NCBI RefSeq assembly: GCF_902459465.1
Contig: NC_047079.1
Span: 10,292,001-10,356,000, forward strand
Direction: 5' to 3'
From: Asterias rubens
Taxonomy: Eukaryota
DNA: 64,000 bases
Shown piece by piece: positions 12,801 through 32,448 of this stretch. Position 1 is the first letter of the stretch; the number at the start of each line of letters is the position of its first letter. The notes below the pieces were generated by a model. It worked only from the letters and a program-made list of their open reading frames with translations, was not told the origin of the DNA and did not search any database. Position numbers and translations under genes: made by a program.

Positions 12801-15800
12801 TCATCGCTTAAAAAGTTTCAGCTTAGCAGAAATGACCAGGATACCAGTCACAGATTGTTCATGTGACCTGGTACTTTAGCTCTTAATCTTATTCTTTTGG
12901 GCTTAATTCTGTTGTGCTTAGCTACTTTTTATGTTTAAGCAGCTCTATTACGTTATACCAAAGTAGTTATAACTTGGGACCATTCACTTTGTTTTTCAAT
13001 TCTTCTGTTGAAATAAGTTCATGCTTGCATGGTATGCCGGGAATTATACCTTTAGTTTATTCTTTCCTCATTTTTTTCCATAAACATCTTGTTAAAGGTA
13101 TGGGTAATAAATTGGAAAACTCTCCAAAACAATTATGACCATAGGAAAAGCAATGAAGCTGTGGATAGTATAAACCATTTTGAGAAAGGATTCCCTTTGA
13201 AGCAATAGGGTTTCCATACTGGGTTGGTTGTTTAGCTTCCCTGTGTCGACCCCGCGGTGCTCATTCGGGTGAGCCCCTGACGAGCTAATCGAACGATCGC
13301 TCACCCTCTCGTGGTGACGTCATGCACCACAGGCTAGCTCAAAGTGACCCGTTCCACGAGCAGGGCACTTGGAGCTGACACGGGTGAGCCCCTGGAGAGC
13401 TATTTAAACGTACCGGGGCAAATCGGGGTCGACCCAGGAAGCTAATCGAATTTTTGTCACCCAAAGAACATTTGAATCTGAGAAACGATTCACGCGTGAA
13501 CTATTTCTCCAGACAACATAGTGTGTCAAGATAAAAAACAAAAATTAAGCTTACCAGGTTTAAACAAATTTTTTTTAGATTGTACAATCTGGCATCTTAC
13601 TTTCATCTGTCGATATTTTTTTGATTAACAACGGAATATGTTTCTGGATTTTTCTCGCTACCTTTAATTGGCAGTTTTTCTTAAAGAGGAGGTGCTAGTT
13701 TTGTTGACGGCGCAGTTTGTCTTCATGTTCAATCAGACATGTTTAGAGGTAAAGTAGACCCACTACGTTATTTATTCATTTATTCAAGCAAACTTGTATC
13801 CCTAATTCTGATTGGTCGATGGATCCATAGCAAGAAGAGTTTGATATTAATATCGCATTTACATTTGATTGGTGGAACACTTATCAAAATGTAATATAGG
13901 AGTCCTATATTTCTGCTAGAAACACAGAAGAAAACCCCTTCTCTTAGTGATAAGTGTAACTTGAATCTTTTACGTGCATTACACTAAACATGAGACATGT
14001 AATATAGGAGTCCTATATTTCTGCCAGAAACACAGAAGAAAACCCCACTCGGCTGATCAGAAACACCAAAGCTTTGTTCTGAGTTAACCAGTGCCCTTAA
14101 CTACTCAGTTATGACACACCACAATGTTTATATTTTCTAGGTTTTATAGTGAACAGCTATCCTAATAGGTATTTAAAACCTTTTTTTTATTGTAACCCCG
14201 CAGACTGCAGTCACAGTTATGACAAAAAACCTTCTGGATTTCGGAGGAATTGAAAACAGCATCTTGTTTGCTGTAGCTGGGTTTGAGGTAAGAAATCAAA
14301 GTATACATTTTAATTCTCATTCGACTTATCATAACTGTTTTGATCCCTAAAATGATAAGTCATGATTTTTTTTTTTTTCAGCTTCTTGCTAGCTTCATCA
14401 TCATCAAATGCATCAGTAAATTTATCTCCGACCGGACGATGTTATTTGCTTCAGTGACACTTGAGTTAGTACCTTACATTATGCTGATGATTTTCTATCC
14501 ACATGCAACACCAGGTAAAATATTGTTTGATGATTACTTGAAAATTACGAGGCCCTTTCACACTAGACCAATTACTCAGGAATTTCCCAGGAATTTCCGA
14601 GGAACTCCACTCATTTCAGTGTTTCTGACACCTCCTTTAACAAACATAAGTGTTGCCTTTCTGTATAATCTTCATAAGCCAGTGCCGAAGCCTTCATCAG
14701 TCAGTGCCGAAGCTAGAGTAACATTTTAGGGAAGCACCGTTTTTTTTTCTTTCTAGAGGACAACTCTGCCCAACTACAATTGTAGTTTCCGTTTGCATTT
14801 TTTTAGCATGTGTACCATAGGTCCTTTTGTTTAGTAAGCAGTTTGCAACAGCTCATTCTATTTTCTCAAATAAAATGTAAAAAAACTTGAATTCTACCTG
14901 ATTTTTCCTTGCAGGGAGGTCCCAGAATCTGTGGTGGTTTTCAATTCTTTTCATCATCCAGGTTTCTGGGCTCGGCTTCCTGCTAATCTCCATCGTATCA
15001 CTCTTCTCAAAGGTCACTCCTCCAGAAATGCAAGGTAAGGTCAAAGATTGTGACCTCAGGTCAAAGTTCAATCTACATGGAAAGTATATGCACATTGTAA
15101 TTGGTGACTTGTCTGTAAACAGTGTAAAGAAAATAAACTCTGGATAAACAGGTCAGCTGGAGCTTAGTCTCGATTGGCTATGCTGTTTTTTTTTATATTA
15201 GTCACCAGTAGAGGGCGCAACATAAACTGTTTGGGATGCTGACTCGGAGCGACTGGGCAAGTCTAGAAACCTGGATTGTTTTCAGCCATTTGTTTGTTTG
15301 ATACTATTTCTTCTCCAGTAATTTATGTTGCGGACAGTTATTCGGTGACTTTTGTTTACAAAATGAAAATCGCCAATCAGGACTAGCTGGAAACATCAAT
15401 AGTAATCAGTATAATTTGTACAAAAACCAATTTGCCAAATTTTGAGGTTTTTGACACAGGTCAATTTCTTGGTACCAGTAAGAATAGAACAATGAGTTTT
15501 TCGGTTGTACCAAGGAGTAGTGTTGGTTGTGAAAAGAACCTTGGGTTGGCAACTCGGTATGCTCTGATCATCTTCAGGAGAATACTGATCGAAAAAGTTG
15601 AGTTGTTCTTTTTAAAACCAACACTACTCAAAAAGAGATTTACACATGGTGCTACCGCAAACCTCGCCTAATAACATTCCCACCATACAAAGTTTCAAAT
15701 CTTACAAATCTTGATAAGGCCATATAAAAAAAAAAGTTGTTGATCGTCCTTTTTTTTTGCGGATGGGGGAGGGAGGGATTTTTTTTTTTTTTTTTTGACA

Positions 15801-16017
15801 TGCCAAATATGAAATCAAGAATAAAGAAATCATCACAACCACTATAAAACAGAGGGTTTGTGTGTTTTTGATGTTTTCAATAGTTTTGTCAAACAAATTT
15901 AACTCCTAGATGACATTGTCTGTAAACTTTTTCAAACATCTAAGCACAGTGTAGCCCAAGTAAATATTTGAAGAATTGTTCTTGCTTTGCCAACATGAAT
16001 AAAAACCTTCTTTAAAC

Positions 16018-16058
<41 letters not shown>

Positions 16059-17219
16059 GTTGGGGGGTTTTGAACGGTCAGGCCGGGACGATCAACAATT
16101 TTTTTTTATGTGGCCTAATGATGGGGTTTGAATTGTACTTCACAGGTTTTGCCCAAGGTGTTCGCCGAGCCGTTGGTGGAATCGGGACCATCATGGGTCC
16201 TTTATGGGCGGGCGGCATGCAGAATATACCATTTGAGACTTTAGCAATCATGATGGCCCTTTTCCTCCTAGTTTGGGTAAGTTAAATATCAACCGTTTTG
16301 TTGTTGCCCAGCGGTTAAGAGAGTTTGACTCAAGCTCCTGGTGTTTCTAATCAGCCATGGCACTACAGTGTCCTTGAACGAGACGCGTTACCATAATAGG
16401 AGACTTTCCAACGCTAGGTGGCAGCAGACATACCGGGTAAATTTCCATTGTTTACGTAGTTCTGAACATGCGCATAATTCTGAGAACAATGGATTTACCC
16501 GGTAAGTCTGCTGCCCTCTATCGTCCCAGAAAGTCTCCCATTGCTTTGTCCTTCAGACAAAATAACCATAGGTCCTGTGTGCTTGGATTGGTAATGCATG
16601 TAAAAGAACCCAGAACACTCAGCATGGAAGAGTAGTGGTTAACCCTGGGCCAAATTTCAAAGAGCTGCTTCAGCACAAAATTCTGTTAAAGCAAAATAAT
16701 CCATGCTTAGTCAAATCAGAACACGGGCTAAGACTCCACTCAATTGTTATGCTAAGTAAACAATAGCTCAATACCAGTCACAAGCAATGTATAACGGCAT
16801 GAAATTTTGGCCAGTAACATGTGTAAAATAAGCAAGCTATTTTCGTGCTTGACCAATTTGTTCGACTAAGAAGCTCCATGAAATTGAACCCTGGCGTTTC
16901 TCGTTCACACAGCAAGCACCCTTGTTTACAGGTTTTCTCAGGCTTGCGAGCTACACTGATCAAGTTCACTTAGGAGGCATCCTAGGTTTCATGAACAGAA
17001 TTACACATGAACCAAACAAATCATTAGTCATACATCAATGTTGCGTCAAACTAAAATCAACATTACCTTCTTCAGATGATGTCGCTGATGTCATGGAAAC
17101 TTCTTAGGCCACACTCAGAAGTCGCAGCCGAGACAAGTCAAGCAAGCTGCAAAGAAGATTCGAAAGAAGAGACCAAACCATTGCTCAATGGTGATGTCAA
17201 AGACTATGGGGTCGCCTGA
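6817..17219 (+). CDS. Major facilitator superfamily transporter, MFSD8/CLN7-like, 11 coding exons, 526 aa
   Basis: Exons 6817-6895, 9027-9212, 10483-10545, 10878-11077, 11957-12323, 13675-13748, 14204-14287, 14382-14514, 14915-15034, 16146-16276, 17076-17219; GT-AG, phases consistent, 1581 nt. About 12 hydrophobic segments, MFS loop GLFQDRFHRTK, TM4 SRLVSGVGAG, TM5 RQIGLLLGP, long hydrophilic central loop. Confidence 0.9.
7018..7143. repeat. Near-perfect 126-bp hairpin (possible TA-flanked MITE) in MFS intron 1
   Basis: Arms 7018-7068 and 7089-7143 are exact reverse complements except one 4-nt indel; 20-nt loop. Confidence 0.9.
7745..8105. mobile_element. Kolobok-type non-autonomous DNA transposon (AGGGAAGGTACAC termini)
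   Basis: TTAA|AGGGAAGGTACAC...GTGTACCTTCCCT; second copy 28010-28382; internal sequence shared with the AGGCAGTGGACAC family. Confidence 0.8.
9316..9490. mobile_element. CAGGCCTG-terminated MITE family (copies about 1826-1945, 3545-3680, 11215-11348, 18996-19160, 22670-22812)
   Basis: Shared body GGGCACCAAGGCCAAGACCAGGGGC..AGAGGCAATTGCC and CAGGCC termini; superfamily not established (hAT-like ends). Confidence 0.7.
9669..10103. mobile_element. MITE with 23-bp perfect TIR GGTGCGTTCCACTCGCGCAAACG
   Basis: TIRs 9669-9691 and 10081-10103; imperfect symmetry extends about 20 bp further out. Confidence 0.8.
10142..10394 (+). mobile_element. tRNA-derived repeat family (copies also about 560-690 + and 62895-63152 -)
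   Basis: A-box-like GGTAGTCTAGTTGG and B-box-like GGTCCGAATCCC inside a ~250-bp unit present three times in the window; GGATTATTTA repeated at 10132-10141 and 10395-10404. Confidence 0.82.
11401..11596. mobile_element. AATAGAC-terminated MITE group (also 10592-10741, 18319-18496, 58783-58895)
   Basis: TIRs AATAGACCGATCCATTA / TAATGGATTGGTCTATT; AATAGACCTTATGCAT / ATGCATAAGGTTTATT; ATAGACGGATTGCAATA / TATTGCAATCCATCTAT. Confidence 0.75.
12357..12529. mobile_element. Palindromic MITE (GCCAAGTCACACTGCA termini); second copy 20330-20496
   Basis: Nearly full-length inverted repeat with GCATCCTATTGGTTGAA / TTCAACCAATAGAATGC inner arms; starts about 33 nt into MFS intron 5. Confidence 0.8.
15205..15218 (+). 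promoter_or_regulatory. CTCF consensus match in MFS intron 9
   Basis: CCAGTAGAGGGCGC matches CCRSYAGRKGGCRS at every position; binding untested. Confidence 0.5.
15715..16117. mobile_element. MITE with TAAGGCCATATAAAAAAAAAAGTTGTTGATCGTCC arms and internal poly-T/poly-A tracts
   Basis: Inverted arms about 15715-15750 and 16085-16117; T-run near 15779-15796 mirrored by an A-run near 16023-16054. Confidence 0.72.
16395..16542. mobile_element. Palindromic ~145-bp MITE with paired CTCF-like motifs; second copy 38370-38507
   Basis: Arms GGAGACTTTC..CTAGGTGGCAGCAGAC / GTCTGCTGCCCTCTA..GAAAGTCTCC; interrupts a tRNA-derived SINE (about 16302-16645). Confidence 0.82.
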
Positions 17220-18825
17220 TGGAAGGTGGGGTGCAAGACTTGCTGTGCGGGTACGTTCTGCTGAAAAAAAGATACGCCAGTTGTTTTGAGAAATTTGTGA
17301 AATGAAAAATGAGGGGTAGTCAGTTTGTCCTAACCTCTGAGGAATAACATGGCTGGAAAACTTCCATCAATAACTGATTTAATTGACATTAACCACGCTG
17401 TCACCATCTTGGTCATGTTCCATGTGTCTAATAACAATAAGGAATGCTAACATTCATTGTGCAAACAAGGCACCAGACTATTATTTCGTCCAGCCTCAGT
17501 TTGGTTACAATGAGTTGGAATGGAGTAAAATCAAGATGGCCACACTGTTACAAAGGTCAACGTAATTTTGTGTTTGGGGAATAAATAAAACGACATTTCA
17601 ACACCATTTTAACTTGAGGTTAGAGAATTGTAATTTGTTCCCACCTTCTTGAGGACTCACTGTACTTAATTGGAAAAGATTGCGTCACAAAACTGAATTT
17701 TACATCAAAGCCTCTCTGTAAACACTTTGTCTTCTGTGTTTTGGATCCAACATTTTGTTTCTTCATCTGGACAAATCTACTGAAAACCAAATCGCCTAAA
17801 ATGATTTTGGTTAAATTGTCAATTCACCTTGTGTCCATTTCAAGGAGTGGCTGCTTCGTCTCACAAAATTATTTTTACTGCACCAGATTTGATGATTTGG
17901 AGCCAGCGAGCCAGTTTCACTTAAAAGCTTAGATTGATCGGAGCACAAAGCTGCCATATTTGCATCTTGCAATCAGGGAAATCGTGTGTTAAGTAAAGGA
18001 GAATGGACGAGAAAGTGTAGATTTGTGGAAAGAATATACGAGCTGAAGGCGGGTACATTGTAGTGTGCAAAACATTATTTTAGCATGTAAAAATGCGTTT
18101 ACATTATTTATGTGACATGGTTTTACTCATTTCTCAAAAACTTCAGCACCTCGGGAAGAAATGTGTCAAGATCTGTGGATTAGTTTTGTGTCCTACAAAA
18201 AGTACCCAGACCTTTTCAGATAAAATCTTTGTGAAATCGAGCCCATCAGTGTCATTTATGACAGACATGGTGCAATAAAAATATTGTTCTTATTTTCTAT
18301 TATTATAAATTATAAATAAATAGACCTTATGCATTGACGTCATCCAGCTGCCATCTTAGAGGTAAAACCGATGCTGAAACAAGAGAAACACGCAGATTTA
18401 AATGCGCAATGCACAGGATTAACCAATGAACAACCTCCTTTCGATCTCTGGTTGAGGACCCTGTACCAAAATGACATCAAATGCATAAGGTTTATTGTGT
18501 GAACTAAGTTTTAAACTTGATAAATAAATATTTTTTTAAATATGCAAGATATTTTTTGAAAACAGTACATTTTTTGGAATTGCTTAGTGTACAAATCATA
18601 CCAGTCCTATGTTGGACTCTACCGAGCAAAGAACATTTAATTTTGTGAAAGTTGAAGCTATCAAATTTAATACTGCTTTATTTTGTATCAGATTGTATCC
18701 ATTAACGATACAGTATTCTATCTTCAAATGTTGGAACTGATTATAGTAACAATAATAAAGAAGTACACATTTTTATGTAATGCCAATTTCTTAGACTTAT
18801 TTTTGATGATGAGTGACAATGAGTA

Positions 18826-19300
18826 GAGTGTCATGGCCGAGCGGTTAAGAGCATCAAATTCAAGTTTTGGCGATAAAGTCTTCGGGTGTGGGTTTGAATC
18901 CCAGCAGCGACACTTGTGCAAGATGCCTGCTATAATTGCTTCTCTTCGGCCCAGGGTATAAATGGGTACCTGCGAGGGTAGAGGTTGATAGTGTCAGGCC
19001 TGGAATTTCATCTTTGAAAGGGCAAGGCCATTTTTATTTTGCAAAGGCCACTTCCAATGGAAATATTAAAGTCAATGGGAAACTTTTGAAGGGGCACCAA
19101 GGCCAAGACCAGGGGCAACAGAGGGCATAAACTCCGTGGCCTGCCTGTAATTCCAGGCTTGTAGCGTGTATGAGAAAGCCAGTGGGGCAGCCCGGGCTGT
19201 AAACTTCCCAGGGAAATTACAGGAAGGTTATTGGCCTAACGACCAGGGCACTTATGTAAAGCGCATTGATATACGTTGTAAAATGTGCTATATATTTTTA
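18826..19300 (+). mobile_element. tRNA-derived SINE (CORE-like body, L2-like tail) interrupted by a MITE at about 18996-19160
   Basis: A box TGGCCGAGCGGTTAAG, B box GGTTTGAATCCC, body CCCAGGGTATAAATGGGTACC, tail TGTAAAGCGC..GTGCTATAT. Domain names are from recalled similarity. Confidence 0.75.
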
Positions 19301-19504
19301 AAGCCTTTGGGAAAGAATCTACAAGGGTCAAAATGTAGGTTCATTAACTACTTTTTGGCAATTAAAGCATAAATTGGTAACTTTGTTGAAATGGCAGTCG
19401 GGCAACATCATTTGTTTTAATGTTCTCCATTTGATGGTACAAACTATAAAATATAAATAACTATAAACTACCAAAACTTAAACAATGTAAAACTAAGTAT
19501 TTAA

Positions 19505-19920
19505 AGGTAGGGTCATAGATTGGTAAACACTCCACAAATTAAAGACCATAAAAACTGCAGCTGTTGATAGTATAACAAATTTTGAGAAAAGATTCCCTTC
19601 AAAGATATTTGGTTTTGATAATTTTTTCACCCCCCCCCAACTTTTTTTTTTTAAAATCTGGTAATCGTTTCTAAGATTTCTGAGGGATGGCGTCTGTTCG
19701 CGAAAGGCTACTGTACCGCTGTCACTTCACTAAATGTGAATGGATTCGTGTAAAAATGCTGTGACAATTTGTTGCTGTTTTTCTCAGCAAGTGGACACTG
19801 TATTCAGCTGAGACACATGTATTCAGCTGAGACACATGTGACTTTTATTGAATCTTTCCTTATGATTTTGTCTAGTAACAAGAATTACGCTGACAAAAAA
19901 AGCAATCTATGACCCTACGT
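19505..19920. mobile_element. Kolobok-type MITE (AGGTAGGGTCATAGAT termini)
   Basis: TTAA|AGGTAGGGTCATAGATTG...CAATCTATGACCCTACGT|TTAA; internal tandem duplication of TGTATTCAGCTGAGACACA near 19799-19838. Confidence 0.82.
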
Positions 19921-21890
19921 TTAAAATGAAAATCAAAACAACAAAATGAAGACTGTGAATAATTATCGATAACAACTTCCAAAGATTGATACTATCAATT
20001 GTACATTGCTCCATCTCAAGATATGCAACGGTAAACAGGGGTCAGTTATAACCCGAGTGCACCTTTACGAGGTGAAAGTCTGATATGAACAGGTCAGAAA
20101 TACAAACTTGTTTGGGAGGTATCAGTCCAGTGTCATGACTCGCACCGAAATGTCTAGCAAGAGCCAACCATTCACTACGGGATAGGTTCAACCGTGCGAG
20201 ATAGTGGCAGAGGGTGGCCCCCCCCCCCTATGCTCCCATACTTTAACACACTCGTCTCTTGGGCCAAATTTCATAGAGCTTCTTAAATATTGAATACTGT
20301 AAAAGCTGGTGGACAATTGAACAGTCTAAAGGCCCAGGCACACAGGCCTCGATAACAAGAACAAAAACGATAATGTTAACAATGCACGCCCTCAAATGGT
20401 TGAATGAGCATGGGCGTATTCTGCGTGGAGCAATTCAACCAATTTGAATGCGTTCTCTTTGCGTCGTTATCGTTTTCGTTGCAGTGTGACTTGGCCTTAA
20501 CAATGAAAAGCTAACTGGTCATGCTTGCTAGTCACTGTAAAAATTAAGGACAAACCCTGCATAGAATGGGAGGGGGGGGGGAACACCATGCCACCAACTG
20601 AGCTCAAAATGGGATAGGTGCACAGTTCTAGGTCATACCACAAGGGCGGGTTTCTATTATAGTCAACCAGTAGTTTATGAATACACGTAGCTCTCATATG
20701 AATGAGCACACTGGTTGCAGACTATACGCTCCATGTTTCTGCAGTAGACCATTAAGACTGGGGGGCCCATGGGGGGGTCGACATAAGTTGACAATTTTTC
20801 TACAGTAAAAGTACATGTGAATGTTCATGTGAGGAAATGAACACCAATCAGCAAGATACATTTTTGTTTGTTTAGAAAAACTTATTTGTTAATCTGTTCA
20901 ACAGAATTTTGAAAGCCTCCAAAAGCTGGGGCGTTTTAGGATGACAAAAAGCGAGCACAGAAGGAATTAATTGCTTATCATCTTTTTAAAATCTTATAAC
21001 CATGAAATTACATTCACTCAAATTCTTTGCCTTCCCTTTTGCCCACTTCCAAAATGGCTACGTGTGTGGGATAGAGCTGCTGCATACTCAACATTAAAAA
21101 ACTTTGTAACTAAAATAAAAATGTTTAAATATATAACAGAATTTATCACCATAATTTTTGTAACTCGCTGATAATACTCTTTTTTTCCACACACTTGATT
21201 TTGTGTGTGTAAAAACTACAAATCAAAGAAAGGTTTGTACTGATAATAATATAAACTCATGAATAAACATATGAATAAAATAAATATTTTTTGTTTTGCA
21301 TGATGATGAAGAGAAAACAAAATGAAAGACATATATTTTTAAATATGGATATATGCTCTGATAAAATATATTCTTTTACAGAGTGTAAAACAAATTGGAT
21401 ATTTTCATGATTGCTTGTATGGAGAAAATGCACCACCTGTTCTTATTTGTAATGAGAATGTTTGCAGAGTTTTCTTTCTTTTTTTGTTAAGGGGGGGGGG
21501 GGGCACCATGCCACATATCAAACAACAAATGTACCTTGTAAAGACCGGTTAACACTTCCTGCAAATGTGTTATATACGAATTTTGACAAAAGAAATACCC
21601 CAACCTTAATTTTAAAATTCTTCAAAGAATTCCTGAGATTTCCAGAACACAATGAACACACTGAGAACAGGGGGTCGGGGCTTACACCAAGCTACATATC
21701 AAGCAACAAATGAACCTCATATAAAGCCCCGTTCATACTTCCTGCGAATGCGACACAAATTTTGACATCACAAATTCGAAGAGATGAGCTGTGTTCAACA
21801 AAATATTCGCAGCGAAAACGGAGCTGTGGCGTAAATATTTATCAGCATTCGCAGATAAGAGTAAGAACCAGGCTTAAGTGTGACTTGGTC

Positions 21891-24800
21891 TTAAGTCAAA
21901 CTACCAGCTCTCTCAAAGCGCTGGTTAAACTTGAACATGTCACTCGTAGGCGACATGCGTAGATTGAAGTCCTTCATGGCCAAGGCCATCGACACTTGTG
22001 CGGACCTAACCTGCTTGACCCTTTTATAACAGCCAAGGCACAGATACAGCTTCCTGTTTTGCTTGTCAGGCGCCAACGCAATGTTAAACTCCTCCTGGAT
22101 GATGTTTGCCACGACCCATTGTTCGCTATTCTTACTGAAAAGCAGCCTCTTCTTGGGCGTGACGGTTACCAGCACGTTGCAGTTCACGCAATTCACACAG
22201 AAGAAATGCTCGATTGTGGAACACATCTTCTTTGTGTAGAGAAAGCCTTCGGGACTTGTGTAACTGCTGAATTTCGTCTTGGCCCGAAATAAAGCTTGAC
22301 GACTGCTACAAATTTTATGCATGACGTTTTCGCAGAACTTGCATAGGATGATGGGAGGTTTCCCGGCAGTCTGAGGCAGCGACAAGTCTATTGCATTCTC
22401 GATGACAGCGACAACATCAGACATCAAGACGCGGTTCCAGTCATCGGGCGGAATAGTTACATCGCAGTTGAGGCAGCTCACTTTCTTGTAGTTTTCAAGC
22501 GAATTGGCTTGCTGAAAAGGTAATGAAAATGAAAGTGTAATAATAACATGGTGTAAAAAAATAAAAACATCACACAATGTAAACTATCACTGAGTGATCT
22601 CTTTCAGTAAAGGCATGCAAAATAGGCTTTAATAGAAATAAACAGAAATCTTCCTTAGAAAAAGCAATTGCCTCCATGCCCCCTGCTCATTGCCTTGGTG
22701 CCCTTGAAATGCTCCAGTAGAAATTGACAATTTCCTCATAGGGTGCCTTTTACCAGAGAGAAAATGCCTTGGTGCCCTTGCCTTTTCAAAAACGAAGCAA
22801 ATACAGGCCCGGTTATTAAACCAAAGATGCCTCATAAGTGAACGTAATCACTGAAGCTTGCAAACCTGAGGAAAACTGTAAACAAGGGTGCTTGCTTACT
22901 TATTATGTGAAGAAGAAAAAAAACTAGGGTTGACCCCTACTCTTCCTGGATGGGTTCTTTTACATTTTGCTTTAGAACACTAGTGACTTGACTGGGACTC
23001 TATCACACACTGGGTTAATTTATTAGAAACACCAGATCTTGTGTCCAGTGCTCTTAACCGCTGAGCCACGACACACGTGCACAACCAGACAAAACTAATT
23101 TGTTTAGCAAGTTTTTTTTCTGATGAATAGCTTTGTGAAATTGTGGGGGTTTTCTCTTCAAGAAAACTGAAGAAAGCAAACATGTGAACACAGGTAAAGT
23201 TAAAAAACACTTCAAGTCCCGTATTGAGCTTCTTTAAAAAAAAAAAAATAAATACAAATTTAGAAAGTATTAGCTTACCCTCTTATCCAGAATAGTTTCT
23301 CTGTTAGGTGCCGGTATTAAGGCTGCATGGGGTGACAGTTGTTGAACTCTGTCTGTCCTCCGGGGGTCTAAGTCAGTTGGAGCTCTTCGGGGCAAGTTTG
23401 TGATGGTGTGTGGATCTTTGCGAGTAGGGTGGACTTGTCTGGCTTGATAAGGAGGAGGTCGACGGATACACTTTAGAATTTCATCCCGATCGACAGAAGT
23501 CCCAAACTTATCCGGGTGGTAATTGCTGCTGCTGTTAGATGCAGGATATTGCAACTCCTTGATGGGAGGTCTCAAGCTCGAATAGTAGGAAGGCGGAGGT
23601 AAAGTGGGCCTCTGTTGAGGATACACATTCGAAGGTACACTGAAGTTGTAAGGTGGCAAATGCATATCTGTGTAGCGTAAACTACCTGTGGAGATCAAAC
23701 GTTGAGTGTTTGTCATGACTTGTGGATTGCCTGGCTGGGATCCCACGGCTCTGTTGGCAAGATCGGGGAATACTGAAGACTCTCCTGGGATCTGGGGATA
23801 AGTAGACATGATAGGTGTATGTCTTGTCCAGGAAGGGTACTTCGGCAAAGTATAAGCAGAGTTATTTACTTGATGGCTTTGCCGGTCTGATAACGGACGA
23901 TAAGCTTCCGGAGGCTGACATTGTGAAATTGGCACCCTAGGAAAACTCATATTGGGATTGGAGGCGTTTAACCACGATGCACAGGCGGCATGGTAACTAG
24001 GTGGGCTAGAAACAGTATTTGAAAAACCGTCCCCGGGTTGTAGTTTGCTTCTCAAAACTGGCAAAGTGTCCTCCTGTTGGACAAATTGAGGTAAAATAGG
24101 TGGTGTTGCACCCTGTGGTTGTCCTTGCAATAGCGGTGGTGGCTTGGGCGAAGTCAACTTCTGCAGCAACACAGGGTGGCTTGGTGAACTGCCTGCTACT
24201 CTGCTATTCAGGCGGAACTGTTTTGGTGGTGGTTCTCCGAAGTTGTTGTTTTTATCAAGGAGTTTCCTTTTGTCTGTAAAGAAGGGATTAGACGCTGCCT
24301 TTGAGACGAACGTTTCAGAACAAGTCTGGTGGGATGGGGAGATTGAGGTAGTCAAAATAGCTTCTTGGGAGGACCAGGTAGGTTCTTGGGAGAACCTGGA
24401 ATGCTCTTGGGAGAACTTAGTATGGGGCAGTTCAGGTGTGAGGTAGCCAGCTCTTTGTGATACAGCAATCACCTCCTTGATTACAGCTTCGTTGGTGCAA
24501 GAGATCACATTCTTCTTAGGCAAACAAGTCTCTGGAGTTGGCAACTGGGGCATGGGAGGATAAGCTGTGAGAATTGGCATATCTACAGCTTGATTAGTGC
24601 AAGAGTTTATATTCTCCTCAGGCACACGAGTCTCTTGAGTCGGGGAAAGGGTCTTGGGATGAAAAGCTGTGAGAACTGGCAAAACTTCTTCGACTTCCTT
24701 CGAGATGCACTCCATCGTTTCCGGTGTTTGCCAATGCAATGACTTCTCCAGAGGTAGGGCGACCATAACCATTGTGGTTTGATCAGACTCTGGGTTTGAC

Positions 24801-26059
24801 TGCTTCGAGACCTCCCCATCAGGTGATTCCGAGGTTTCCACTGACACGGATTGAATACACTCTGCAGTGGTTTCTGTGGACTCTGTCATATCTTCCACAG
24901 ACATGGTGACAATCTCATTTGTCTGCCATACTGGGAATACCTCTTTAGAAGCTGAGGTAGTTGTCTCATTTTCAGACATAGATTGCTGAGCTGTTTGTTT
25001 GACAACCTGTATCAAAGGTGTGTCAACATCGCTATCAGTGGCAGAAACCTTGAGATGGTTCCCATCATAAGCTGTCATATCTCTTCGGACCTGTAACTCA
25101 TCAGGAAATGTTCGGGTCTGTGGTGCTGATGGGATGCCCTGCTGTGTTGTTTCATTCAGCAGATTCTTTAGTATTTTAGTCTTGATGACATCCTTAAACG
25201 ATTTTTCAAGGGAATCTTTTATCACATTTTGAACAGACATGTTGACAATATTCTGACGTGTATTGGGTGAAAGTGCTTCATCTTCAGTTAAGTTTGATGT
25301 CAGACCAAAAGTAAGTGATTCCTGGGTTGAATGATCTATTGTTGCACCTGTTTTCTTGGATGGTTGAGAGAGGTCCGAGGTAGCTCCATCAGACATTTCA
25401 TATGGAATCGTAGAGCAAGACATTTGCAGAGGTGCGTCATCATGACCCAGAATATGAGACTCTCTGACAACTTCTGCCCCAAGCGACTTTGCATCGGCCA
25501 CAATTTCTGAGGCTTGATAATAGAAAGCATCGTGAACGGGATCTCTTCCCTGCAACTCCCACGTCAGTGCTTCCTGAGTAAAGTCAGATGTACATCTAAG
25601 AATGCACGGTTGTAACTTCATGAAAAATGATGAATCAATGTTGTCCCCTGAAGAAACTGTTGAGTCATCAGTTATAGTGGCAGGAGTGGGATCGGCTCTA
25701 AAAAGACTGACAGGAACTGGAGTGACAGGAGCTTGGGTGACAGAAACTGCGGTGACAGAAACTGCGGTGACAGGAACTGGGGTGACAGGAACTGCAGTGA
25801 CAGGGACCGGGGTGACAAGAACTTGGGTGACAAGAACTTGGGTGACAGGAACTTGGGTGACAGGAACTTGGGTGCCAGGAACTGAGGTGACAGGAATATT
25901 TAGTGCAGTGTCCACCCAGTTGGCTTCGTTTAAAGCCATCATCTCTCTCACTGTCATACTTGTGCGTCTTTTTCGCAGTTGGATACTTCCGCCACTGTGC
26001 TGAAAACGTGCTCCTGCACTTGAGAACCTTGGAACCTTTTCATCCGGATGGCTTCTCAT
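21891..26059 (-). CDS. Large Pro/Ser/Thr-rich protein with two C-terminal ZAD (zf-AD)-like C4 zinc domains, about 1133 aa from M26059
   Basis: Open 2.8-kb exon (acceptor before 26084, donor AGG|gtaagc at 23279/23278) spliced in phase 0 to exon 22511-21891 (tttcag|CAA). Last exon has CLNC-x40-CKFC and CVNC-x46-CLGC with ZAD-like spacing. Start codon and upstream exons uncertain. Confidence 0.8.
22905..23075 (-). mobile_element. tRNA-derived SINE (relatives about 16302-16645 + and 13920-14118 -)
   Basis: Head GTGTCGTGGCTCAGCGGTTAAGAGCAC, body TGTAAAAGAACCC..GAAGAGTAGGGGTCAACCC. Confidence 0.7.
25707..25897 (-). repeat. Coding 15-bp minisatellite (about 13 units) encoding VT[QPA]V[PSL] pentapeptides
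   Basis: Plus-strand unit GGTGACAGGAACTTG repeated head-to-tail with substitutions, in frame in the large exon. Confidence 0.92.
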
Positions 26060-27158
26060 TTCAGCAAATAAATTGAGTTGACATCTGTTTTGAAGAAAAA
26101 AAAAAGAACAAAAGCTTAGGACACATGGTAACTGACCTTAAGTGGACATTTTATTGTCATCTTCTTGTATCCCTTTCCCAAAACTAGTTTAGCACTGAAC
26201 CTTGGGTAGCACCTTTTAGGGTCCTTTGAGTCGAAGCCTCATACAGAAAACTACAAAAATTGAGAAACTTGAGTGTGTTTTGGTTGATTGCGCACAACCA
26301 GTACATTTGAATTGTACTTCGAAAATCACCACAACAGAAACCTACTGGGCATCAAAAAATAATTAACTCAAAAAAAGTAATCATAAGGCTGAAAGGATTT
26401 AGGTACTTTTTGAAACACAAAGTCCACAGATTTACATTACACCACCCTTTGAATGTAATGAGTAGGAAGCAAACCCCTTAAAATATTACCTGCTCAGGTG
26501 CTGTAGTTTTTGTTTTACTAATTTTACGAAAACTACATCACCTCAGCAAGTAATATTTTAAGGGAAGCCTTCTACCTACCATCACTATCTTCACACTGTG
26601 CGACTTTAATCTAAATCTGTTGACATTGTGTTTTGTGTCCTTCAAAATGCACCTGGACCCTTTAAAGGGACTTTCAGAGTACTTAGTCAATTTTAAAATA
26701 GATTTACCAATACTCTATAGACGATGTTACCTACGTTCAAACCGCCCTCTGTTGACAAAACACTGTACAGGTCACGTTTTGCCGGGCAAAAAGATGCGCA
26801 GTCAGGGTAACATTGCATCTTTTTCTAGCTGGCTGCCAAAACACAAAGGTTTTGCCCGGCGGTATGCGCGCGAATCATGTTATGTTTTTCGAGTGACGTC
26901 AGAGGTCACATCGTCTATACACTGTGAAGAATAAAGTAATGCCTCAACCATACATTTTAGACCAAACGTCTCCAACAGTCATTTTCATTGGCTTAGACAT
27001 TTGAATGACTTTGTAGATTAGTCAGGAATGATCTTGGGTATTATTTCTTCTCTTCTTTTTGTTTACTAATTATAGGCCCTACACATGTATACTTATTTTA
27101 AAATATAAAGGTCAAATTTTGACAACAAGTTTTCACCAATTCACAATTTTTTATTTAA

Positions 27159-27531
27159 AGGCAGTGGACACTATTGGTAATTACTCGAAATAATAATTGG
27201 CATAAAACCTTTCTTGGTGACGAGTAATGGGGAGAGGTTGATGGTATAAAACATTGTGAGAAACGGCTCCCTCTGCCATAGTTTTCGAGAAAGAAGTAAT
27301 TTTCCACGAATTGGATTTTAAGACCTCAGATTTAGAACTTGAGGTCTCAAAATCAACCATCTTAACGCACACAACTTCGTGTGACAAGGGTTATTTTTCT
27401 TTCATTATTATCTTGCAACTTCGATGACTGATTGAGCTCATATTTTTACAGGTTTGATATTTTATGCATATGTTGAGATACACCAACTGTGAATGCCAGT
27501 CTTTGACAATTACCAATAGGGTCCACTGCCT
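27159..27531. mobile_element. Kolobok-type MITE, AGGCAGTGGACAC family
   Basis: TTAA|AGGCAGTGGACAC...GGGTCCACTGCCT|TTAA. TTAA target with purine-purine termini is the Kolobok pattern. Further copies 32449-32808, 33197-33582, 52979-53330; partial about 48565-48857 and 50090-50388. Confidence 0.85.
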
Positions 27532-29642
27532 TTAACATCAACTTTTTTGAAACCCCAAAAGGCACCCCATAGTAAAAAAAAAAAAACACCTTTTAGTGTC
27601 CTTTGATTTTCAACGTCTGGGTAATAAAAGAGATTGTAAAATATACCTTTGAAATAATTCTATAGCTTCACATTGTGTTGAGAAGGTGTGCTTCAAGGAT
27701 GAGTGGTCAAACTATCAATGTTTTCTAAGAAGAAAAGAAAGTGTGACCCCCCCCCACCAACCTTTAGGATTGGCATCTGTACCCATCCAGGTCTCGCTCT
27801 AATGCATTACAAACAAGAACTAATATTACTATTTTGGTAAATATTTTGAAATTGTGCTTTGTGTTACAAAAAGTAACTAAAAGTCTCATACACATGTACA
27901 GACCCACAAATCATTAGATGACACGTCAAAAAGAACAATAATCCAAAGGCAAAATTGTGGAAAGTGGGGGAAATCTTAGAAATGATGTCACAAGAGAAAT
28001 ATCATTTAAAGGGAAGGTACACGTTTGCTAATTACTCAAAACAAATATTAACTTATAAACTGACTTGGTAACGAGCATTGGAGAGCTGTTGATAGTATAA
28101 AACATTGTGGGAAATGACTCCCTCTGATTCTGAAGTAATGTAGTTTTCGAAAAAGAGGTAATTTCTGACTAAAATAATAAAAGACTTCTAGCTAGAAGTC
28201 TTTAATTCCTATCTGAAAGCACACAAATTCGCCCAACAAGGGTGTTTTTTCTTTCATCATTTTCTCGCAACTTCACTGACCGATTGAGCCCAAATTTTCA
28301 CATTTTTGTTATTTAATGCACATGATGGGATACACCAAGTGAGAAGACTAGTCTTTGACAATACCAAAGGTGTACCTTCCCTCTAACATGTAGTGACATC
28401 ATTTCCTAGAATAAGGTTATTTGGCAATGGTCAACAGGGGAGTTTCTGTTAACTCAGTCGAGGTCAGAGCCTAGGAATGTGTGCTGAGCAATGGGAGAGT
28501 ATGGCCACCTGTTGAGATGTAACTTGGGGGACCAGTGAATATCCTTTAAAAGTGAAATGGTTTCTCAATCAGTCTGCTGTTATTTATAATTCTACCTCTC
28601 ATGTTGCTATTAGTTTTAAGAGTGATTACCCCACATATACCCAATAACCCCTCTGGGCTTTCCCCTCTAGAGTCGTTTATAAAATAAAACAAAAACATTA
28701 CTACAACTTTTTCAGTCACTAGACAGCAGGTACGCCATGTCCTTAACAGTTGTATAGGAAGCAATACTAGTTGGGCAGAATTCTGACTTGTCCTGTCATT
28801 TGGTCAGCGGACCACTGATAAAAAAAGGGAGAAATTTTACCAGCTCTTTGCCCGGCCTGTACCTGGCTTTTGTCCATGGTCTGATATGGTCTGATACATG
28901 GTCATGGTCTGTCCCTACACAGTAGACAACTATGGATGAATTCAATCTGTGTAGAGTTATCCTTTTAATCTTTTAATTTAACTGATTTAACTTTTAATTT
29001 AAGGGATAGGGGGGCACAGAGGTGCTTAAAGACCTGCCAGACATACTGACACCACCTGATGCAATAAAAAGATGGCTGGAATGGTTCCACTTTATCAGAG
29101 GGGTAGATCTAAGATAGGTTTAAGATGCTAAGATTTTGTAATATGGGTGTTGTTGTGTTGCCCCAGCCCATCCCCCAAAACATGGGAACTGGCTCCCCTT
29201 CCTTTGATGTGGAACGGTCTAGTCTACAATACCATGGACAATAAACTTGTTCTGGGCAATGCAATTGGGAAAAACAATAAAATACATAAATATGTCTCCC
29301 AAAATGGATTTCAATTCTTTGAGCTTGGGAGTTTCAGTTTGGTTGGCTCAAGATAAACACCCAATGGCTCAACTCAGCATGGTCTAAAGGCTATCAGTTT
29401 CAAATCTCCAATTCACTGGCTACACAAGCCCCCCCCCCCCCATTGCAAGGTCACTGGTCCCAACCACCAGTAAAGGCTGAAGTGGAAGAAGAAGGAAATA
29501 TTCATGGTCTCTCTTGGGACCCTGAATAGTTATCAGCTTTAAAGGGAGTACTGTTGTTTTATGAACAGGGGTGACTTTGGATTTATTGTAACATAGAAAA
29601 ACAAATAACTATTTTATGTAGTTTTTTTTACATTATTAACAT

Positions 29643-29937
29643 TAAGCTTGGGCGATATCACGATATTATCGAATATCGCGATATTAATTTGGACACGATT
29701 TCGATATCGGATGGATTTGGTTTTAATCGAAATATCGATATATCGCGATATATCGCCAGAAGAATAGGTCATTAGAACACCTCTCTTATTATATACTAGG
29801 ACTGTCTCTTCTACAACTTTCACTTGGAGTTTTAAGACTGATGATGTCAAATTTCATTAATCGCGATTATATCGAATATCGCGATATATTGTCTGCGATA
29901 TATCGTGAATAAAATAAATCGATATCGCCCAAGCTTA
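29643..29937. mobile_element. hAT-type MITE with perfect 8-bp target-site duplication
   Basis: TIR TAAGCTTGGGCGATATC / GATATCGCCCAAGCTTA; TSD ATTAACAT at 29635-29642 and 29938-29945; many subterminal ATCG/CGAT repeats. Confidence 0.92.
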
Positions 29938-30970
29938 ATTAACATTTCTCAATTTATTTCTGTATGGGGTCATAAGGTCATGGGGGAGCCTTACAGTTTC
30001 TAGAAGTAGGGTGATGTATGCAAATTGACTATGATTCTCTTGTGTAATTCGTTGCCTAAATATAATTTTCCTGTTTTTTTTTTTATAAGGGTCCATTTAC
30101 AGCATCGTCAATCATGGTCAAACTTTTGTTGTTATATTTTAGGTAGTTTTCATAAAACATAGGAGAACACCCATTAATCATGTTGTAGACCAATAGAAAA
30201 AACATTAAAACTGTCATGGTTTTACAACATTCAATTCAATTCACTTTTATAATTAAATAATGACAACCTGTGTTTCTACCTCCATTGGCATTAAATACTC
30301 ATTCATTCATATCCAACCCTATATTTAGCATTTTTAGCTATAATAGTTACAATTTAAAAAAGGCATGTGATAATGTCAATAATTTTATTATGTTTTTAAA
30401 CCTATTTTCCACACAGACAATGCATTCGTTTTTACACTCAGTCTCGAGTGCTGAAAGAGCGCTAAATTAAAAAGGGGCTAAGTTGTTCAAGAAAACTTCC
30501 TCTCAAGAATTCCTGATTCCATGGAGGAAAGAAACGTCCTTCCTCCATACTGATTCCATGTTCTAAGCACCACTACGAGCGCCGTCAAAGTGGGTACACG
30601 AATCGTAGTGGTCGTCGGTGGCTTGCCCACTTTACCACCCGCACAGACCACGGTCACCGTACGAACCCTGGGACCATGGAAGGAGAGGGACCGAGTTTCA
30701 AAAGTCATCCTGTTTCGCTCCACTCTTTCGTCTTTGGGGTCCCAAATAACAACTATTTTTACTTGAATTGAACGCCACATAAACTTACCTAAATATCTCC
30801 CAGTTTACAAAAGCCAAATACTCACGAAATGTGTATTCTAACAGAAGTTTGTGCTTGGTATTTTAGCTACAGCAAACGTACACAACTGGCTAGTGGGTGC
30901 GCGCGCTCTTATCTTCGGCCTATGCCAAACTTTACCCACGTGTTGTAATTTAGTGACAGTTGTCAAAACA

Positions 30971-30984
30971 GCGCCCTCTCGTGG
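30971..30984 (-). promoter_or_regulatory. CTCF-like motif at the putative promoter of the double-ZAD gene
   Basis: CCACGAGAGGGCGC (1 mismatch); about 150-180 bp upstream of minus-strand donors gtgagt (about 30824) and gtaagt (30788); CpG-rich context. Confidence 0.5.
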
Positions 30985-32448
30985 TTTGGATCACCAAGCC
31001 CCTATGATTTTTAAATGTCCCCGCCCCCTTCATTTTGTTTAAAAACCCTCATCAGTTCCTTCAAGATTTAACAATACAAGGCTTTATAGTGTGGTCTTAA
31101 TCTTAAGTATCGGGAACGGAATGCAAAGAATGTAGCTTTTTGTGGAGTGTTTGGGGGGGGGGGCTTTTCTGAGTTTAAAGGTTGGGTGGAGTCCATATCA
31201 TATCAATTTATTTGGGGCCATATTAATCGAAACGCTTGCCAAAGATTGAACATTAAAAAACAGTTACAACAAAAATGTTGTTAATGAAGAAGAAAAAAAT
31301 CAAACATAGACAAACTTAGCATTTAAGAATAACAATATCACTATCAGTTTATTGCCACCCCGATAGTATTTTGCATACAAAATTTTTGCAAGTGACCATG
31401 AGTAACAATGAGTGAAGTAAAACAATGTTTTATCACATTAGGCACTTTCAACTGACAAGTTCCTTGCATCACGAATACAGTTTCATCTTTACTTTGATGG
31501 CTTGTATTTTTTCTTCTTAAATCAATGGCCACACAAATACTTATACCATAAAGAAAAAAAAAACAGTTTGCCTGGCGTTTTACAAGTAAATTTTGTTCGC
31601 AGATCCCAACATGGTCACCCATCTGTAGAAATATAACAAAAGGCTACTGGTAGTACCTACGTGCACCATGCCCTATATGTTTGGGAATGGGGAGGGTGTG
31701 CCCCCCCCCCCTCAAACATACCCCATATCTCACACATGTTTCTATACTTTAAGACACTCTAAATTACCTCTTGCTCAGTGTCTACCTCCAAGCTCATCAG
31801 AAGTACCTCCCCTAAAAACCTGTGATAGAGTTTTTTTGTACAAGAGGACTAAAGACTTCCTGAGATTCCCTGAACACAATGAAGACAAAAAAGAGTGGGG
31901 GGGGGGGGTACATACCATGCCACATATCAAGCTACCAAGCAAAGAATGTGCTTACATTATGGCTATGGGAATGAAGATCATTTTGACTATGGCTCTCTCA
32001 TTAACTCTCCCAATGCATGGAGGAGGGAATAGCCTGTCAGATTTAATGCTTAATAAGGCATTGTCTGCCTCCCCTTTTTGTGTAGTGATTGGAATCTCAA
32101 GTATTCTTAACAGGTCTTTTTAGGGAGGGGACTTCTAACCAGGAACATAGTGTGTTAAAGTACAGGAACATTTGGGGGGGGGGGGGGGGTACCCTCTGCC
32201 AAGTTGTGGACATGGTATTTCCAGCCTATGTTTGGCTTCCAATTCCATTGATATTTAGCGGGGAAAAATGATGCATGCGTGCAATGTGATAATATTTTCC
32301 CAATTGTTACTTTCATTGAGGCGAGGGCGAGTTGAATGAAAATTTCTCCATTGCAAGAATGCAAAACATGTATTAATTGTATTTAAAGGGCCTGGGTACT
32401 TTTTATACGACACAAAACACAATGTTTACAGATTTAAGTTAAACTTAA

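What the first reader, a model, noticed from the sequence alone, without database searches (positions are those of the whole stretch)
21891..22511. Two tandem ZAD-like domains at the C-terminus of a protein with no visible C2H2 array
CLNC-x40-CKFC and CVNC-x46-CLGC, the second with RLLFS..VANIIQEEFNIAL.PD..LYLCLGCYKRVKQV, fit the zf-AD pattern. Established: ZAD is normally a single N-terminal dimerisation domain of C2H2 proteins, greatly expanded in insects (architectural proteins Pita, Zw5, ZIPIC) and rare in vertebrates (ZNF276). A doubled, C-terminal ZAD after ~930 disordered residues in a non-insect is an unusual architecture.
Basis: partly seen in the sequence, partly recalled or inferred. 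Interest (0 to 1): 0.74.

Follow-up and report, generated by a model that had tools for sequence, protein, structure and literature searches.

The report
Sea-star orphan protein, twin zinc modules
The last exon of a sea-star-only gene encodes two related four-cysteine zinc-binding modules behind a ~930-residue disordered region; they look like the insect ZAD dimerisation domain in pattern, but neither the ZAD sequence model nor fold searches confirm it, so for now it is an undescribed lineage-restricted zinc module.

Summary
On the minus strand, the exon at 22511-21894 (stop 21893-21891) encodes CLNC-x40-CKFC and CVNC-x46-CLGC. It is spliced in phase 0 to a 927-codon P/S/T-rich exon (26059-23279). 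Gene models in three sea stars and RNA data support the junction.

An exhaustive phmmer search found relatives only in Asterias, Acanthaster and Patiria. All have the same two-exon structure, the domain at the C-terminus, no C2H2 fingers, and conserved gene neighbours. All eight cysteines are invariant at about 25% identity. The two modules align with each other (hhalign P 1.7e-4), so they look like an internal duplication.

The ZAD reading is not confirmed:
- **Sequence:** no Pfam zf-AD hit at E<=10 for the exon or for any module of any species, and no ZAD chain in PDB profile searches.
- **Other weak matches:** ribosomal eS26 (profile E 0.04), HPV E6 and bacterial treble clefs score about the same.

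Most likely this is a new asteroid-restricted tandem C4 treble-clef-type module, probably a protein-interaction or dimerisation platform. True ZAD homology remains possible (about 0.2).

The parts
23279..26059 (-). Coding exon 1: 927 codons from the ATG. It is P/S/T-rich, has no Pfam domain and no C2H2 motif, and holds three PPxY motifs (24004-23993, 23596-23585, 23458-23447).
   Evidence: ORF list; donor AGG|gtaagc; Pfam 0 families; composition and motifs; same start as P0004.
22512..23278 (-). Phase-0 intron of 767 nt (gt...ag). Part of it is high-copy repeat.
   Evidence: RNA depth is zero at 23079-23275. The repeat-derived depth at 22488-23078 is also seen in run X10, which has no reads on the exons. 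An orthologous phase-0 intron occurs in three other sea stars.
21894..22511 (-). Coding exon 2: 206 codons, the whole twin-module domain. The stop codon is at 21893-21891.
   Evidence: phmmer E 5.6e-09 and 7.8e-09 to the C-termini of the Acanthaster and Patiria proteins. dN/dS 0.25 against A. amurensis.
22257..22481 (-). Module 1 (exon residues 11-85): C13-x2-C16-x40-C57-x2-C60, followed by a predicted helix and the conserved F81.
   Evidence: Cysteines and F81 invariant. Aligns to module 2 with hhalign P 1.7e-4. Cysteine codons at 22475-22473, 22466-22464, 22343-22341 and 22334-22332.
21927..22202 (-). Module 2 (exon residues 104-195): C108-x2-C111-x46-C158-x2-C161. The modelled long helix starts at the second CxxC.
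   Evidence: AlphaFold model pLDDT 71.6, helix 62-88 at pLDDT 80-90. Cysteine codons at 22190-22188, 22181-22179, 22040-22038 and 22031-22029.
25708..25896 (-). 15-nt tandem repeat (12.6 copies) encoding the (V/P)(P/S)VT(Q/A) pentapeptide array near the N-terminus. Copy number differs from A. amurensis.
   Evidence: TRF; protein comparison.
25688..25720 (-). Short N-terminal linear motif PVPVSLFRADP. Apart from the zinc domain it is the only stretch recognisably shared with the Acanthaster and Patiria proteins (P-x-P-V-x-L-[IF]-R-A-[ND]-P).
   Evidence: Full-length alignment; coordinates.

Best explanation
This is a real, expressed, two-exon gene found so far only in sea stars (Asteroidea). 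Its product is a long, fast-evolving P/S/T-rich disordered region with PPxY motifs and one short N-terminal motif. It ends in a compact domain encoded by a single terminal exon.

That domain is an internal duplication of one module. Each module has a CxxC zinc knuckle, then about 40-46 residues, then a second CxxC that starts a long helix, with a conserved Phe 20 residues after the last Cys. This is the layout of a treble-clef Cys4 zinc finger, so each module should bind one structural zinc.

Shown: the sequence pattern, its conservation, the duplication, the splice, the restricted taxonomic range and purifying selection.

Inferred: zinc binding, the treble-clef-type fold (from a medium-confidence model), and the function. 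I think the most likely function is a zinc-stabilised protein-protein interaction or self-association platform. The two long helices would pack either against each other within one chain or between chains, tethering the disordered scaffold. That is, it probably works like a ZAD. It does not pass the tests for being a ZAD family member and is best filed as an undescribed, lineage-restricted C4 module.
For: - Pattern and coordinates.
- Eight invariant Cys at 24-27% identity.
- Modules align in register, all four Cys plus one Phe, with a single 6-residue gap; hhalign P 1.7e-4.
- Only three 50%-identity clusters among 1.84 billion representatives, all sea stars, with the domain always C-terminal. 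Three further word-indexed searches found nothing else.
- Same phase-0 intron 8-13 codons before the first Cys in A. amurensis, A. planci and P. miniata.
- The upstream pogo DDE-PHD gene is conserved in A. amurensis and A. planci, and the downstream MFS gene is shown in A. planci.
- RNA coverage of both exons and a contig ending at the acceptor.
- dN/dS 0.25 for the domain exon and 0.44 for the disordered exon, against A. amurensis.
- AlphaFold model of module 2 from a 7-row module alignment: pLDDT 71.6, pTM 0.53, strands followed by helix 62-88 beginning at C61/C64.
- Nearest shapes are zinc treble clefs or zinc ribbons, including ZAD.
Against: - Zinc binding and the fold are not shown. The model's N-terminal half has only pLDDT 52-79, and I could not read its coordinates to check Cys geometry.
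- The alignment behind the model mixes the two modules, which assumes they are homologous.
- No fold match is significant, so even 'treble clef' rests on pattern plus weak matches.
- Nothing tests dimerisation.
- The domain is mildly basic (K+R 28 against D+E 17 in Asterias), which would also suit nucleic-acid binding.
- Between Acanthaster and Patiria the domain is no better conserved than the disordered part (40% each), so it is not an especially constrained core apart from the Cys scaffold.
Confidence: 0.55

Rival explanations
1. The modules are true but highly diverged ZADs, homologous to arthropod zf-AD and vertebrate ZNF276. They are duplicated in tandem and detached from any C2H2 array, and they act as a dimerisation or intramolecular pseudo-dimer unit.
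For: - The Cys spacing (40 and 46) lies within the range I recall for ZADs (from memory, not checked against a paper here), and the second CxxC starts a long helix as in published ZADs (PMC7913770; model).
- 'ZAD domain-containing' AFDB clusters sit at ranks 20 and 30.
- An arthropod C2H2 protein is the first row of the Atlas shape search (TM 0.49).
- Language-model features put a mollusc cluster with 30% zf-AD members among the named neighbours for two of three orthologues.
- ZADs are known to fall below 18% identity among themselves.
Against: - No zf-AD hit at E<=10 in seven scans of single sequences.
- No ZAD chain at E<=10 in four PDB profile searches.
- No ZAD among the top 30 Swiss-Prot models.
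- All structural scores are in the noise range and are tied with ribosomal proteins and E6.
- The ZAD alpha1 helix is not predicted in the model.
- Atlas feature scores are all below 0.9, and the Patiria query did not return zf-AD.
- The architecture is opposite to every known ZAD protein.
Confidence: 0.2
2. The modules are nucleic-acid-binding zinc modules of the ribosomal eS26 or zinc-ribbon kind, and the protein is an RNA- or DNA-binding factor rather than a dimeriser.
For: - The only near-threshold sequence match anywhere is the combined module profile against eS26. It scores E 0.038-0.06 and about 17 bits, is colinear over 66 columns, covers both CxxC pairs, has the same spacing (47 against 46) and shares the V-x-C-[VI]-N-C knuckle.
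- eS26 models are rank 1 in Swiss-Prot and rank 2 in PDB Foldseek.
- The domain carries a net positive charge.
Against: - The E-value is not significant, and most of the score comes from four Cys at matching spacing.
- Module 2's own profile does not find eS26, and module 1's finds it only at E about 1, through the first knuckle.
- Pfam Ribosomal_S26e is not hit.
Confidence: 0.12
3. The twin zinc domains plus connecting helix form a peptide-binding pocket, as in papillomavirus E6. This would be a two-module CxxC...CxxC protein that grips short helical motifs of partner proteins.
For: - The tandem duplicated C4 modules, each followed by a helix, resemble the E6N/E6C layout.
- E6 clusters appear among the feature neighbours of two orthologues at 0.65-0.68.
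Against: - The Cys spacing is 40 and 46, not the 29 I recall for E6 (from memory).
- There is no Pfam E6 hit.
- All scores are at noise level.
- The viral library gives nothing significant.
Confidence: 0.05
4. The pattern is a chance arrangement of cysteines in a non-functional or mis-annotated exon.
For: No known family matches, and the domain evolves fast.
Against: - Eight of eight Cys are conserved across two sea-star orders.
- The intron phase and position are conserved.
- There is RNA coverage and dN/dS is 0.25.
- phmmer E is about 1e-8 against 1.84 billion proteins.
Confidence: 0.02

Closest known systems
ZAD (zinc-finger-associated domain; Pfam PF07776, SMART SM00868; structures 1PZW Grauzone, 7POH Serendipity-delta; vertebrate ZNF276/ZFP276 ZAD-like domain)
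   Same: Four Cys as CxxC, about 40-50 residues, CxxC. The second pair sits at the start of a long amphipathic helix, with strands after the first knuckle. Sequence turnover is very fast, with only the Cys and a few hydrophobic positions kept. It is the best whole-domain solved-structure match, though at noise level.
   Different: It fails the Pfam model. It is C-terminal rather than N-terminal, doubled in tandem, and has no C2H2 array anywhere in the protein. It occurs in an echinoderm-only orphan gene. The alpha1 helix is not predicted, and dimerisation is untested.
Ribosomal protein eS26 (Pfam PF01283)
   Same: CxxC-x47-CxxC spacing and a V-x-C-[VI]-N-C first knuckle. It is the best, though non-significant, profile-to-sequence match (E 0.04).
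Papillomavirus E6 (two CxxC-x29-CxxC zinc domains)
   Different: Different Cys spacing, no sequence-model match, and a viral rather than animal cellular protein.
Generic treble-clef Cys4 fingers (e.g. bacterial zf_Tbcl PF13451, ClpX zinc-binding dimerisation domain, uS14)
   Same: Knuckle plus a helix-initiating CxxC. Atlas shape matches reach TM 0.47-0.53, and the LYLCxxC motif resembles the uS14 second knuckle.
   Different: Those have much shorter inter-knuckle spacers and lack the long C-terminal helix with the conserved Phe. None is significant.

Membership tests
ZAD (PF07776 / SM00868) | Four invariant zinc-ligand cysteines as C-x2-C ... C-x2-C with a spacer of roughly 40-55 residues | tested here: met
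   Spacers of 40 and 46 residues. All 8 Cys are invariant in three genera.
ZAD (PF07776 / SM00868) | Match to the family's sequence model at or above its curated cut-off | tested here: not met
   No zf-AD line at E<=10 for the exon, for modules 1 and 2 of three species, or for the full orthologues. HMMER's filters drop most hits above E about 0.1, so this means 'no better than noise'. SMART was not available.
ZAD (PF07776 / SM00868) | Fold: N-terminal zinc loop, two-stranded sheet, alpha1, and a long C-terminal alpha2 carrying the second Cys pair (PMC7913770) | tested here: inconclusive
ZAD (PF07776 / SM00868) | Homodimerisation through the long helix | not testable with these tools
ZAD (PF07776 / SM00868) | N-terminal position in a protein with a C-terminal C2H2 array | tested here: not met
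   The domain is at the extreme C-terminus in all orthologues. There is no C2H2 Pfam hit or C2H2 regular-expression match anywhere.
Ribosomal eS26 (PF01283) | Match to the family model; eS26 fold | tested here: not met
THAP (PF05485) | C2CH ligand set (C-x2-4-C-x35-53-C-x2-H) and a match to the family model | tested here: not met
   The fourth ligand is Cys in both modules. No THAP hit at E<=10. THAP appeared only as a weak feature neighbour.
Papillomavirus E6 (PF00518) | Two CxxC-x29-CxxC motifs (spacing from memory) and a match to the family model | tested here: not met
Yippee / Mis18 / beta-tent CxxC-x~50-CxxC domains | All-beta fold with two CxxC knuckles (from memory) and a match to the family model | tested here: not met
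   No Pfam hit. The model places a 27-residue helix directly at the second CxxC with pLDDT 80-90.

The most novel reading that the evidence does not exclude
The modules are genuine ZADs. That would make this the first ZAD found outside the ZAD-C2H2 architecture and the first in an echinoderm. It would be duplicated in tandem at a C-terminus, so that the two copies form an intramolecular pseudo-dimer, or a tetramerising unit, that organises a long disordered scaffold. It would show that the ZAD fold is an old, free-standing bilaterian interaction module rather than an arthropod accessory of C2H2 factors.
Probability: 0.2. Interest if true: 0.6.

Novelty: new variant of a known kind. Interest (0 to 1): 0.38.

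Why it matters
ZADs are the hallmark dimerisation domain of the largest insect transcription-factor family, and only one vertebrate protein is known to carry one. A free-standing, doubled, C-terminal relative in an echinoderm would change ideas about where the fold came from and what it can be attached to.

Even if it is not a ZAD, this is a clean example of a lineage-restricted gene kept across two sea-star orders. Its only firmly conserved features are a Cys8 scaffold and a conserved intron. It has no annotation in any database and lies next to domesticated transposase-PHD genes. Patiria miniata is an experimentally tractable species, so the function can be tested directly.

As it stands, it is a modest finding: an undescribed small zinc domain family.

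Tried and rejected
- **Single-sequence AlphaFold of the 206-aa exon:** pLDDT 29, useless.
- **Enlarging the family:** one exhaustive phmmer search and three word-indexed searches found only the three sea-star clusters. The three were the Acanthaster domain region, the 3-row domain profile and the full-length profile. The alignment for modelling therefore stayed very shallow.
- **Pfam:** whole exon, both modules and three species gave only sub-threshold PHD, RING and Zn-ribbon noise from single CxxC knuckles.
- **PDB sequence profile searches:** nothing for the whole domain. eS26 scored E 0.04 for the mixed module profile. I judged this non-significant because the separate module profiles do not reproduce it.
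- **ESM Atlas feature searches:** all scores were below 0.9 and the families differed between orthologues (zf-AD, RAG1_imp_bd, THAP/Lin-15B, E6, FAM60A, Stc1). I treated them as leads only.
- **Literature:** a search for the orthologues' accession numbers gave 0 papers.
- **Direct profile-profile comparison with a ZAD alignment:** not done. No tool returned ZAD sequences, and I did not type any from memory.
- **Rejected readings:** THAP (wrong fourth ligand), beta-tent/Yippee (a helix sits at the second CxxC), and chance.

Full report
**1. What is in the sequence**

On the minus strand, a 929-codon ORF starts at the ATG at 26059 and runs into a consensus donor, CTG GAT AAG AGG|gtaagc. The exon ends at 23279. 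The next acceptor, ttttcag|CAA GCC AAT, lies at 22511. The junction is phase 0 and reads ...ETILDKR|QANSLENYKK.

The second exon (22511-21894, stop 21893-21891) encodes 206 residues. They contain C13-LN-C16, 40 residues, C57-KF-C60, and then C108-VN-C111, 46 residues, C158-LG-C161.

**2. The gene is real and the exons are joined**

- NCBI's Asterias amurensis protein XP_071805376.1 (P0004, 1186 aa) has the same start and the same junction.
- I mapped that protein and the Acanthaster planci and Patiria miniata relatives back onto their loci. All three genes have two coding exons. Each has a phase-0 gt..ag intron 8-13 codons before the first CxxC.
- In RNA run X9, both exons are covered at about 5-10 reads per direction. 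Intron bin 23079-23275 has no reads. The deep signal at 22488-23078 is also present in run X10, which has no reads on the exons, so it comes from a dispersed repeat.
- A 333-nt contig of run X1 lies on 22250-22511 and stops exactly at the acceptor. Its 71 remaining letters explain the X1 depth in the bin that holds the end of exon 1 (6.07 x 71/197 = 2.19). The joint itself was not among the printed rows, so this step is an inference.
- The reads differ from the window at fixed sites, so they come from a close relative or another individual.
- Against A. amurensis, dN/dS is 0.44 for exon 1 and 0.25 for exon 2. The exons are about 98% identical and the intron about 90%.

**3. Taxonomic range and conservation**

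An exhaustive phmmer search with the 206 residues covered 1.84 billion cluster representatives. It found three clusters:
- the gene's own cluster (Asterias);
- Acanthaster planci LOC110979185 (1273 aa, E 5.6e-09);
- Patiria miniata LOC119745819 (1420 aa, E 7.8e-09).

In each, the match is at the extreme C-terminus, and all are named 'uncharacterized'. Three more searches added nothing, and no paper mentions these accessions.

Gene order is conserved. A pogo DDE-PHD gene lies upstream in the same orientation, in both A. amurensis and A. planci. An MFS transporter gene lies downstream in convergent orientation; its exons were matched to the window from the A. planci locus.

Across the Forcipulatida-Valvatida split the domain is only 24-27% identical. 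Even so, all eight cysteines are invariant, together with about 25 other positions, mostly hydrophobic. The other three cysteines of the Asterias exon are not conserved.

The rest of the protein is P/S/T-rich and has no Pfam domain and no C2H2-like motif. Beyond the zinc domain, it shares only a short N-terminal motif (PxPVxL[IF]RA[ND]P) and PPxY motifs across the orders. The domain is not a slow-evolving island: between Acanthaster and Patiria it is 40% identical, the same as the disordered part.

**4. The two modules are copies of one unit**

MAFFT aligns the six orthologous modules, plus a near-identical seventh row, in a single register. All four Cys and a Phe 20 residues after the last Cys line up, with one 6-residue gap. 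hhalign of the module 1 profile against the module 2 profile gives P 1.7e-4, with 74 columns aligned at 49% probability. I read this as an internal tandem duplication that predates the split of the two sea-star orders.

**5. Is it a ZAD?**

*Sequence tests.* Pfam hmmscan at E<=10 was run on the exon, on each module of each species and on the full orthologues. It never lists zf-AD. Only sub-threshold PHD, RING and Zn-ribbon lines appear, and each rests on one knuckle. Profiles of the domain and of each module were also searched against all PDB sequences, which include ZAD chains such as 7POH. They never return a ZAD chain at E<=10.

*Structure.* The single-sequence model failed (pLDDT 29). A model of module 2 built from the 7-row module alignment reached pLDDT 71.6 and pTM 0.53. 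It has short strands after the first knuckle and a 27-residue helix (62-88, pLDDT 80-90) that begins at C61/C64. This order of elements agrees with the published ZAD description: zinc loop, beta-hairpin, alpha1, then a long alpha2 (PMC7913770). The alpha1 helix is not predicted, and that part of the model has low confidence.

*Fold searches.* None is significant.

| Library | Result |
|---|---|
| PDB Foldseek | All E>1. The highest TM-score in the list is the Serendipity-delta ZAD 7poh_B (0.42/0.47). |
| AFDB clusters | E>=0.2. Two 'ZAD domain-containing' entries at ranks 20 and 30. |
| Swiss-Prot models | No ZAD in the top 30. eS26 is rank 1 at E 3.2. |
| Atlas shape search | An arthropod C2H2 protein (TM 0.49) and bacterial treble-clef fingers (0.47-0.53). 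|
| Wide VIA search | Only the long helix matches. |
| Viral library | Nothing significant. |

Language-model feature neighbours (all below 0.9) include zf-AD-containing mollusc clusters for two orthologues but not the third. RAG1_imp_bd, THAP/Lin-15B, E6 and FAM60A also appear.

*Conclusion.* The ZAD pattern is there, and ZAD is among the nearest known shapes. The membership tests that could be run are either failed (sequence model, architecture) or inconclusive (fold).

**6. The eS26 similarity**

The mixed module profile gives its best PDB hit to ribosomal protein eS26. The match has E 0.038-0.06 and about 17 bits, and is colinear across both CxxC pairs with nearly the same spacing. I do not regard it as evidence of homology:
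- it is below significance;
- it depends mostly on four Cys and the C-[VI]-N-C knuckle;
- it disappears for module 2 alone and falls to E about 1 for module 1 alone;

I keep it as a rival reading.

**7. Best reading**

This is an asteroid-restricted protein. It has a long disordered scaffold, and its C-terminal exon encodes two homologous Cys4 zinc modules of treble-clef type, each ending in a long helix.

By analogy with ZAD, the ClpX zinc-binding domain and other treble clefs carrying long helices, the most likely role is zinc-stabilised self-association or partner binding. This would tether the disordered region, whose PPxY motifs suggest WW-domain partners. That functional step is an inference. 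Zinc binding, oligomeric state and localisation are all untested.

**8. Limits**

- The family has only three diverged members, so every profile and the AlphaFold alignment are shallow.
- The model's coordinates could not be inspected.
- No ZAD sequences were available from a tool for a direct profile-profile comparison.
- No multimer prediction was possible.

Noticed in passing
window 10880-16285, 21891-26059, 34199-36028; L001, L002: Gene order is conserved: pogo DDE-PHD gene, then this gene in the same orientation, then a convergent MFS transporter gene. The upstream DDE-PHD gene was matched to the window from the A. planci locus, and the MFS exons were matched from A. planci. The A. amurensis locus is colinear with the window and carries the same neighbours. 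The linkage to the domesticated transposase-PHD genes therefore predates the split of two sea-star orders. This may be plain synteny rather than a functional module.
   Followed up: partly
window 25708-25896 and 24482-24681: There are two coding tandem repeats inside exon 1. One is a 15-nt unit in 12.6 copies that encodes a VPVTx array. The other is a 102-nt unit in 2 copies that encodes a 34-residue repeat. Copy numbers differ from A. amurensis (927 against 980 codons in exon 1). The 133-aa plus-strand ORF at 25602-26003 is just the antisense of the VPVT array.
   Followed up: partly
window 25688-25720: A short N-terminal motif, PVPVSLFRADP, is followed by an acidic and Ser/Thr-rich stretch. 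Outside the zinc domain it is the only sequence island shared with the Acanthaster and Patiria proteins (PxPVxL[IF]RA[ND]P, then D/E/S/T). It resembles a hydrophobic-core-plus-acidic-tail interaction motif such as a SUMO-interaction motif.
   Followed up: no
window 24004-23993, 23596-23585, 23458-23447: The Asterias protein has three PPxY motifs (PPSY, PPSY, PPPY). Acanthaster and Patiria each have one PPPY within a conserved PPPPYPG. These are possible WW-domain docking sites.
   Followed up: no
window 22488-23078 and 26428-27600: Very high RNA and contig depth (10^3 to 10^5) with many odd joints, seen in all four runs, including a run with no reads on the gene's exons. These are high-copy dispersed repeats, one inside the intron and one upstream of the gene.
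   Followed up: no
window 21894-22511: The mixed module profile gives a colinear but non-significant match to ribosomal protein eS26 (E 0.04). It shares the V-x-C-[VI]-N-C first knuckle and the 46/47-residue spacing.
   Followed up: partly
window 13954-31425 vs L001: The window is colinear with the A. amurensis locus. Identity is about 82-96% over aligned blocks and about 98% in this gene's coding exons. All RNA reads of 'organism A' differ from the window at fixed sites. The window species is therefore a close relative of the organisms sampled, not the same one.
   Followed up: partly
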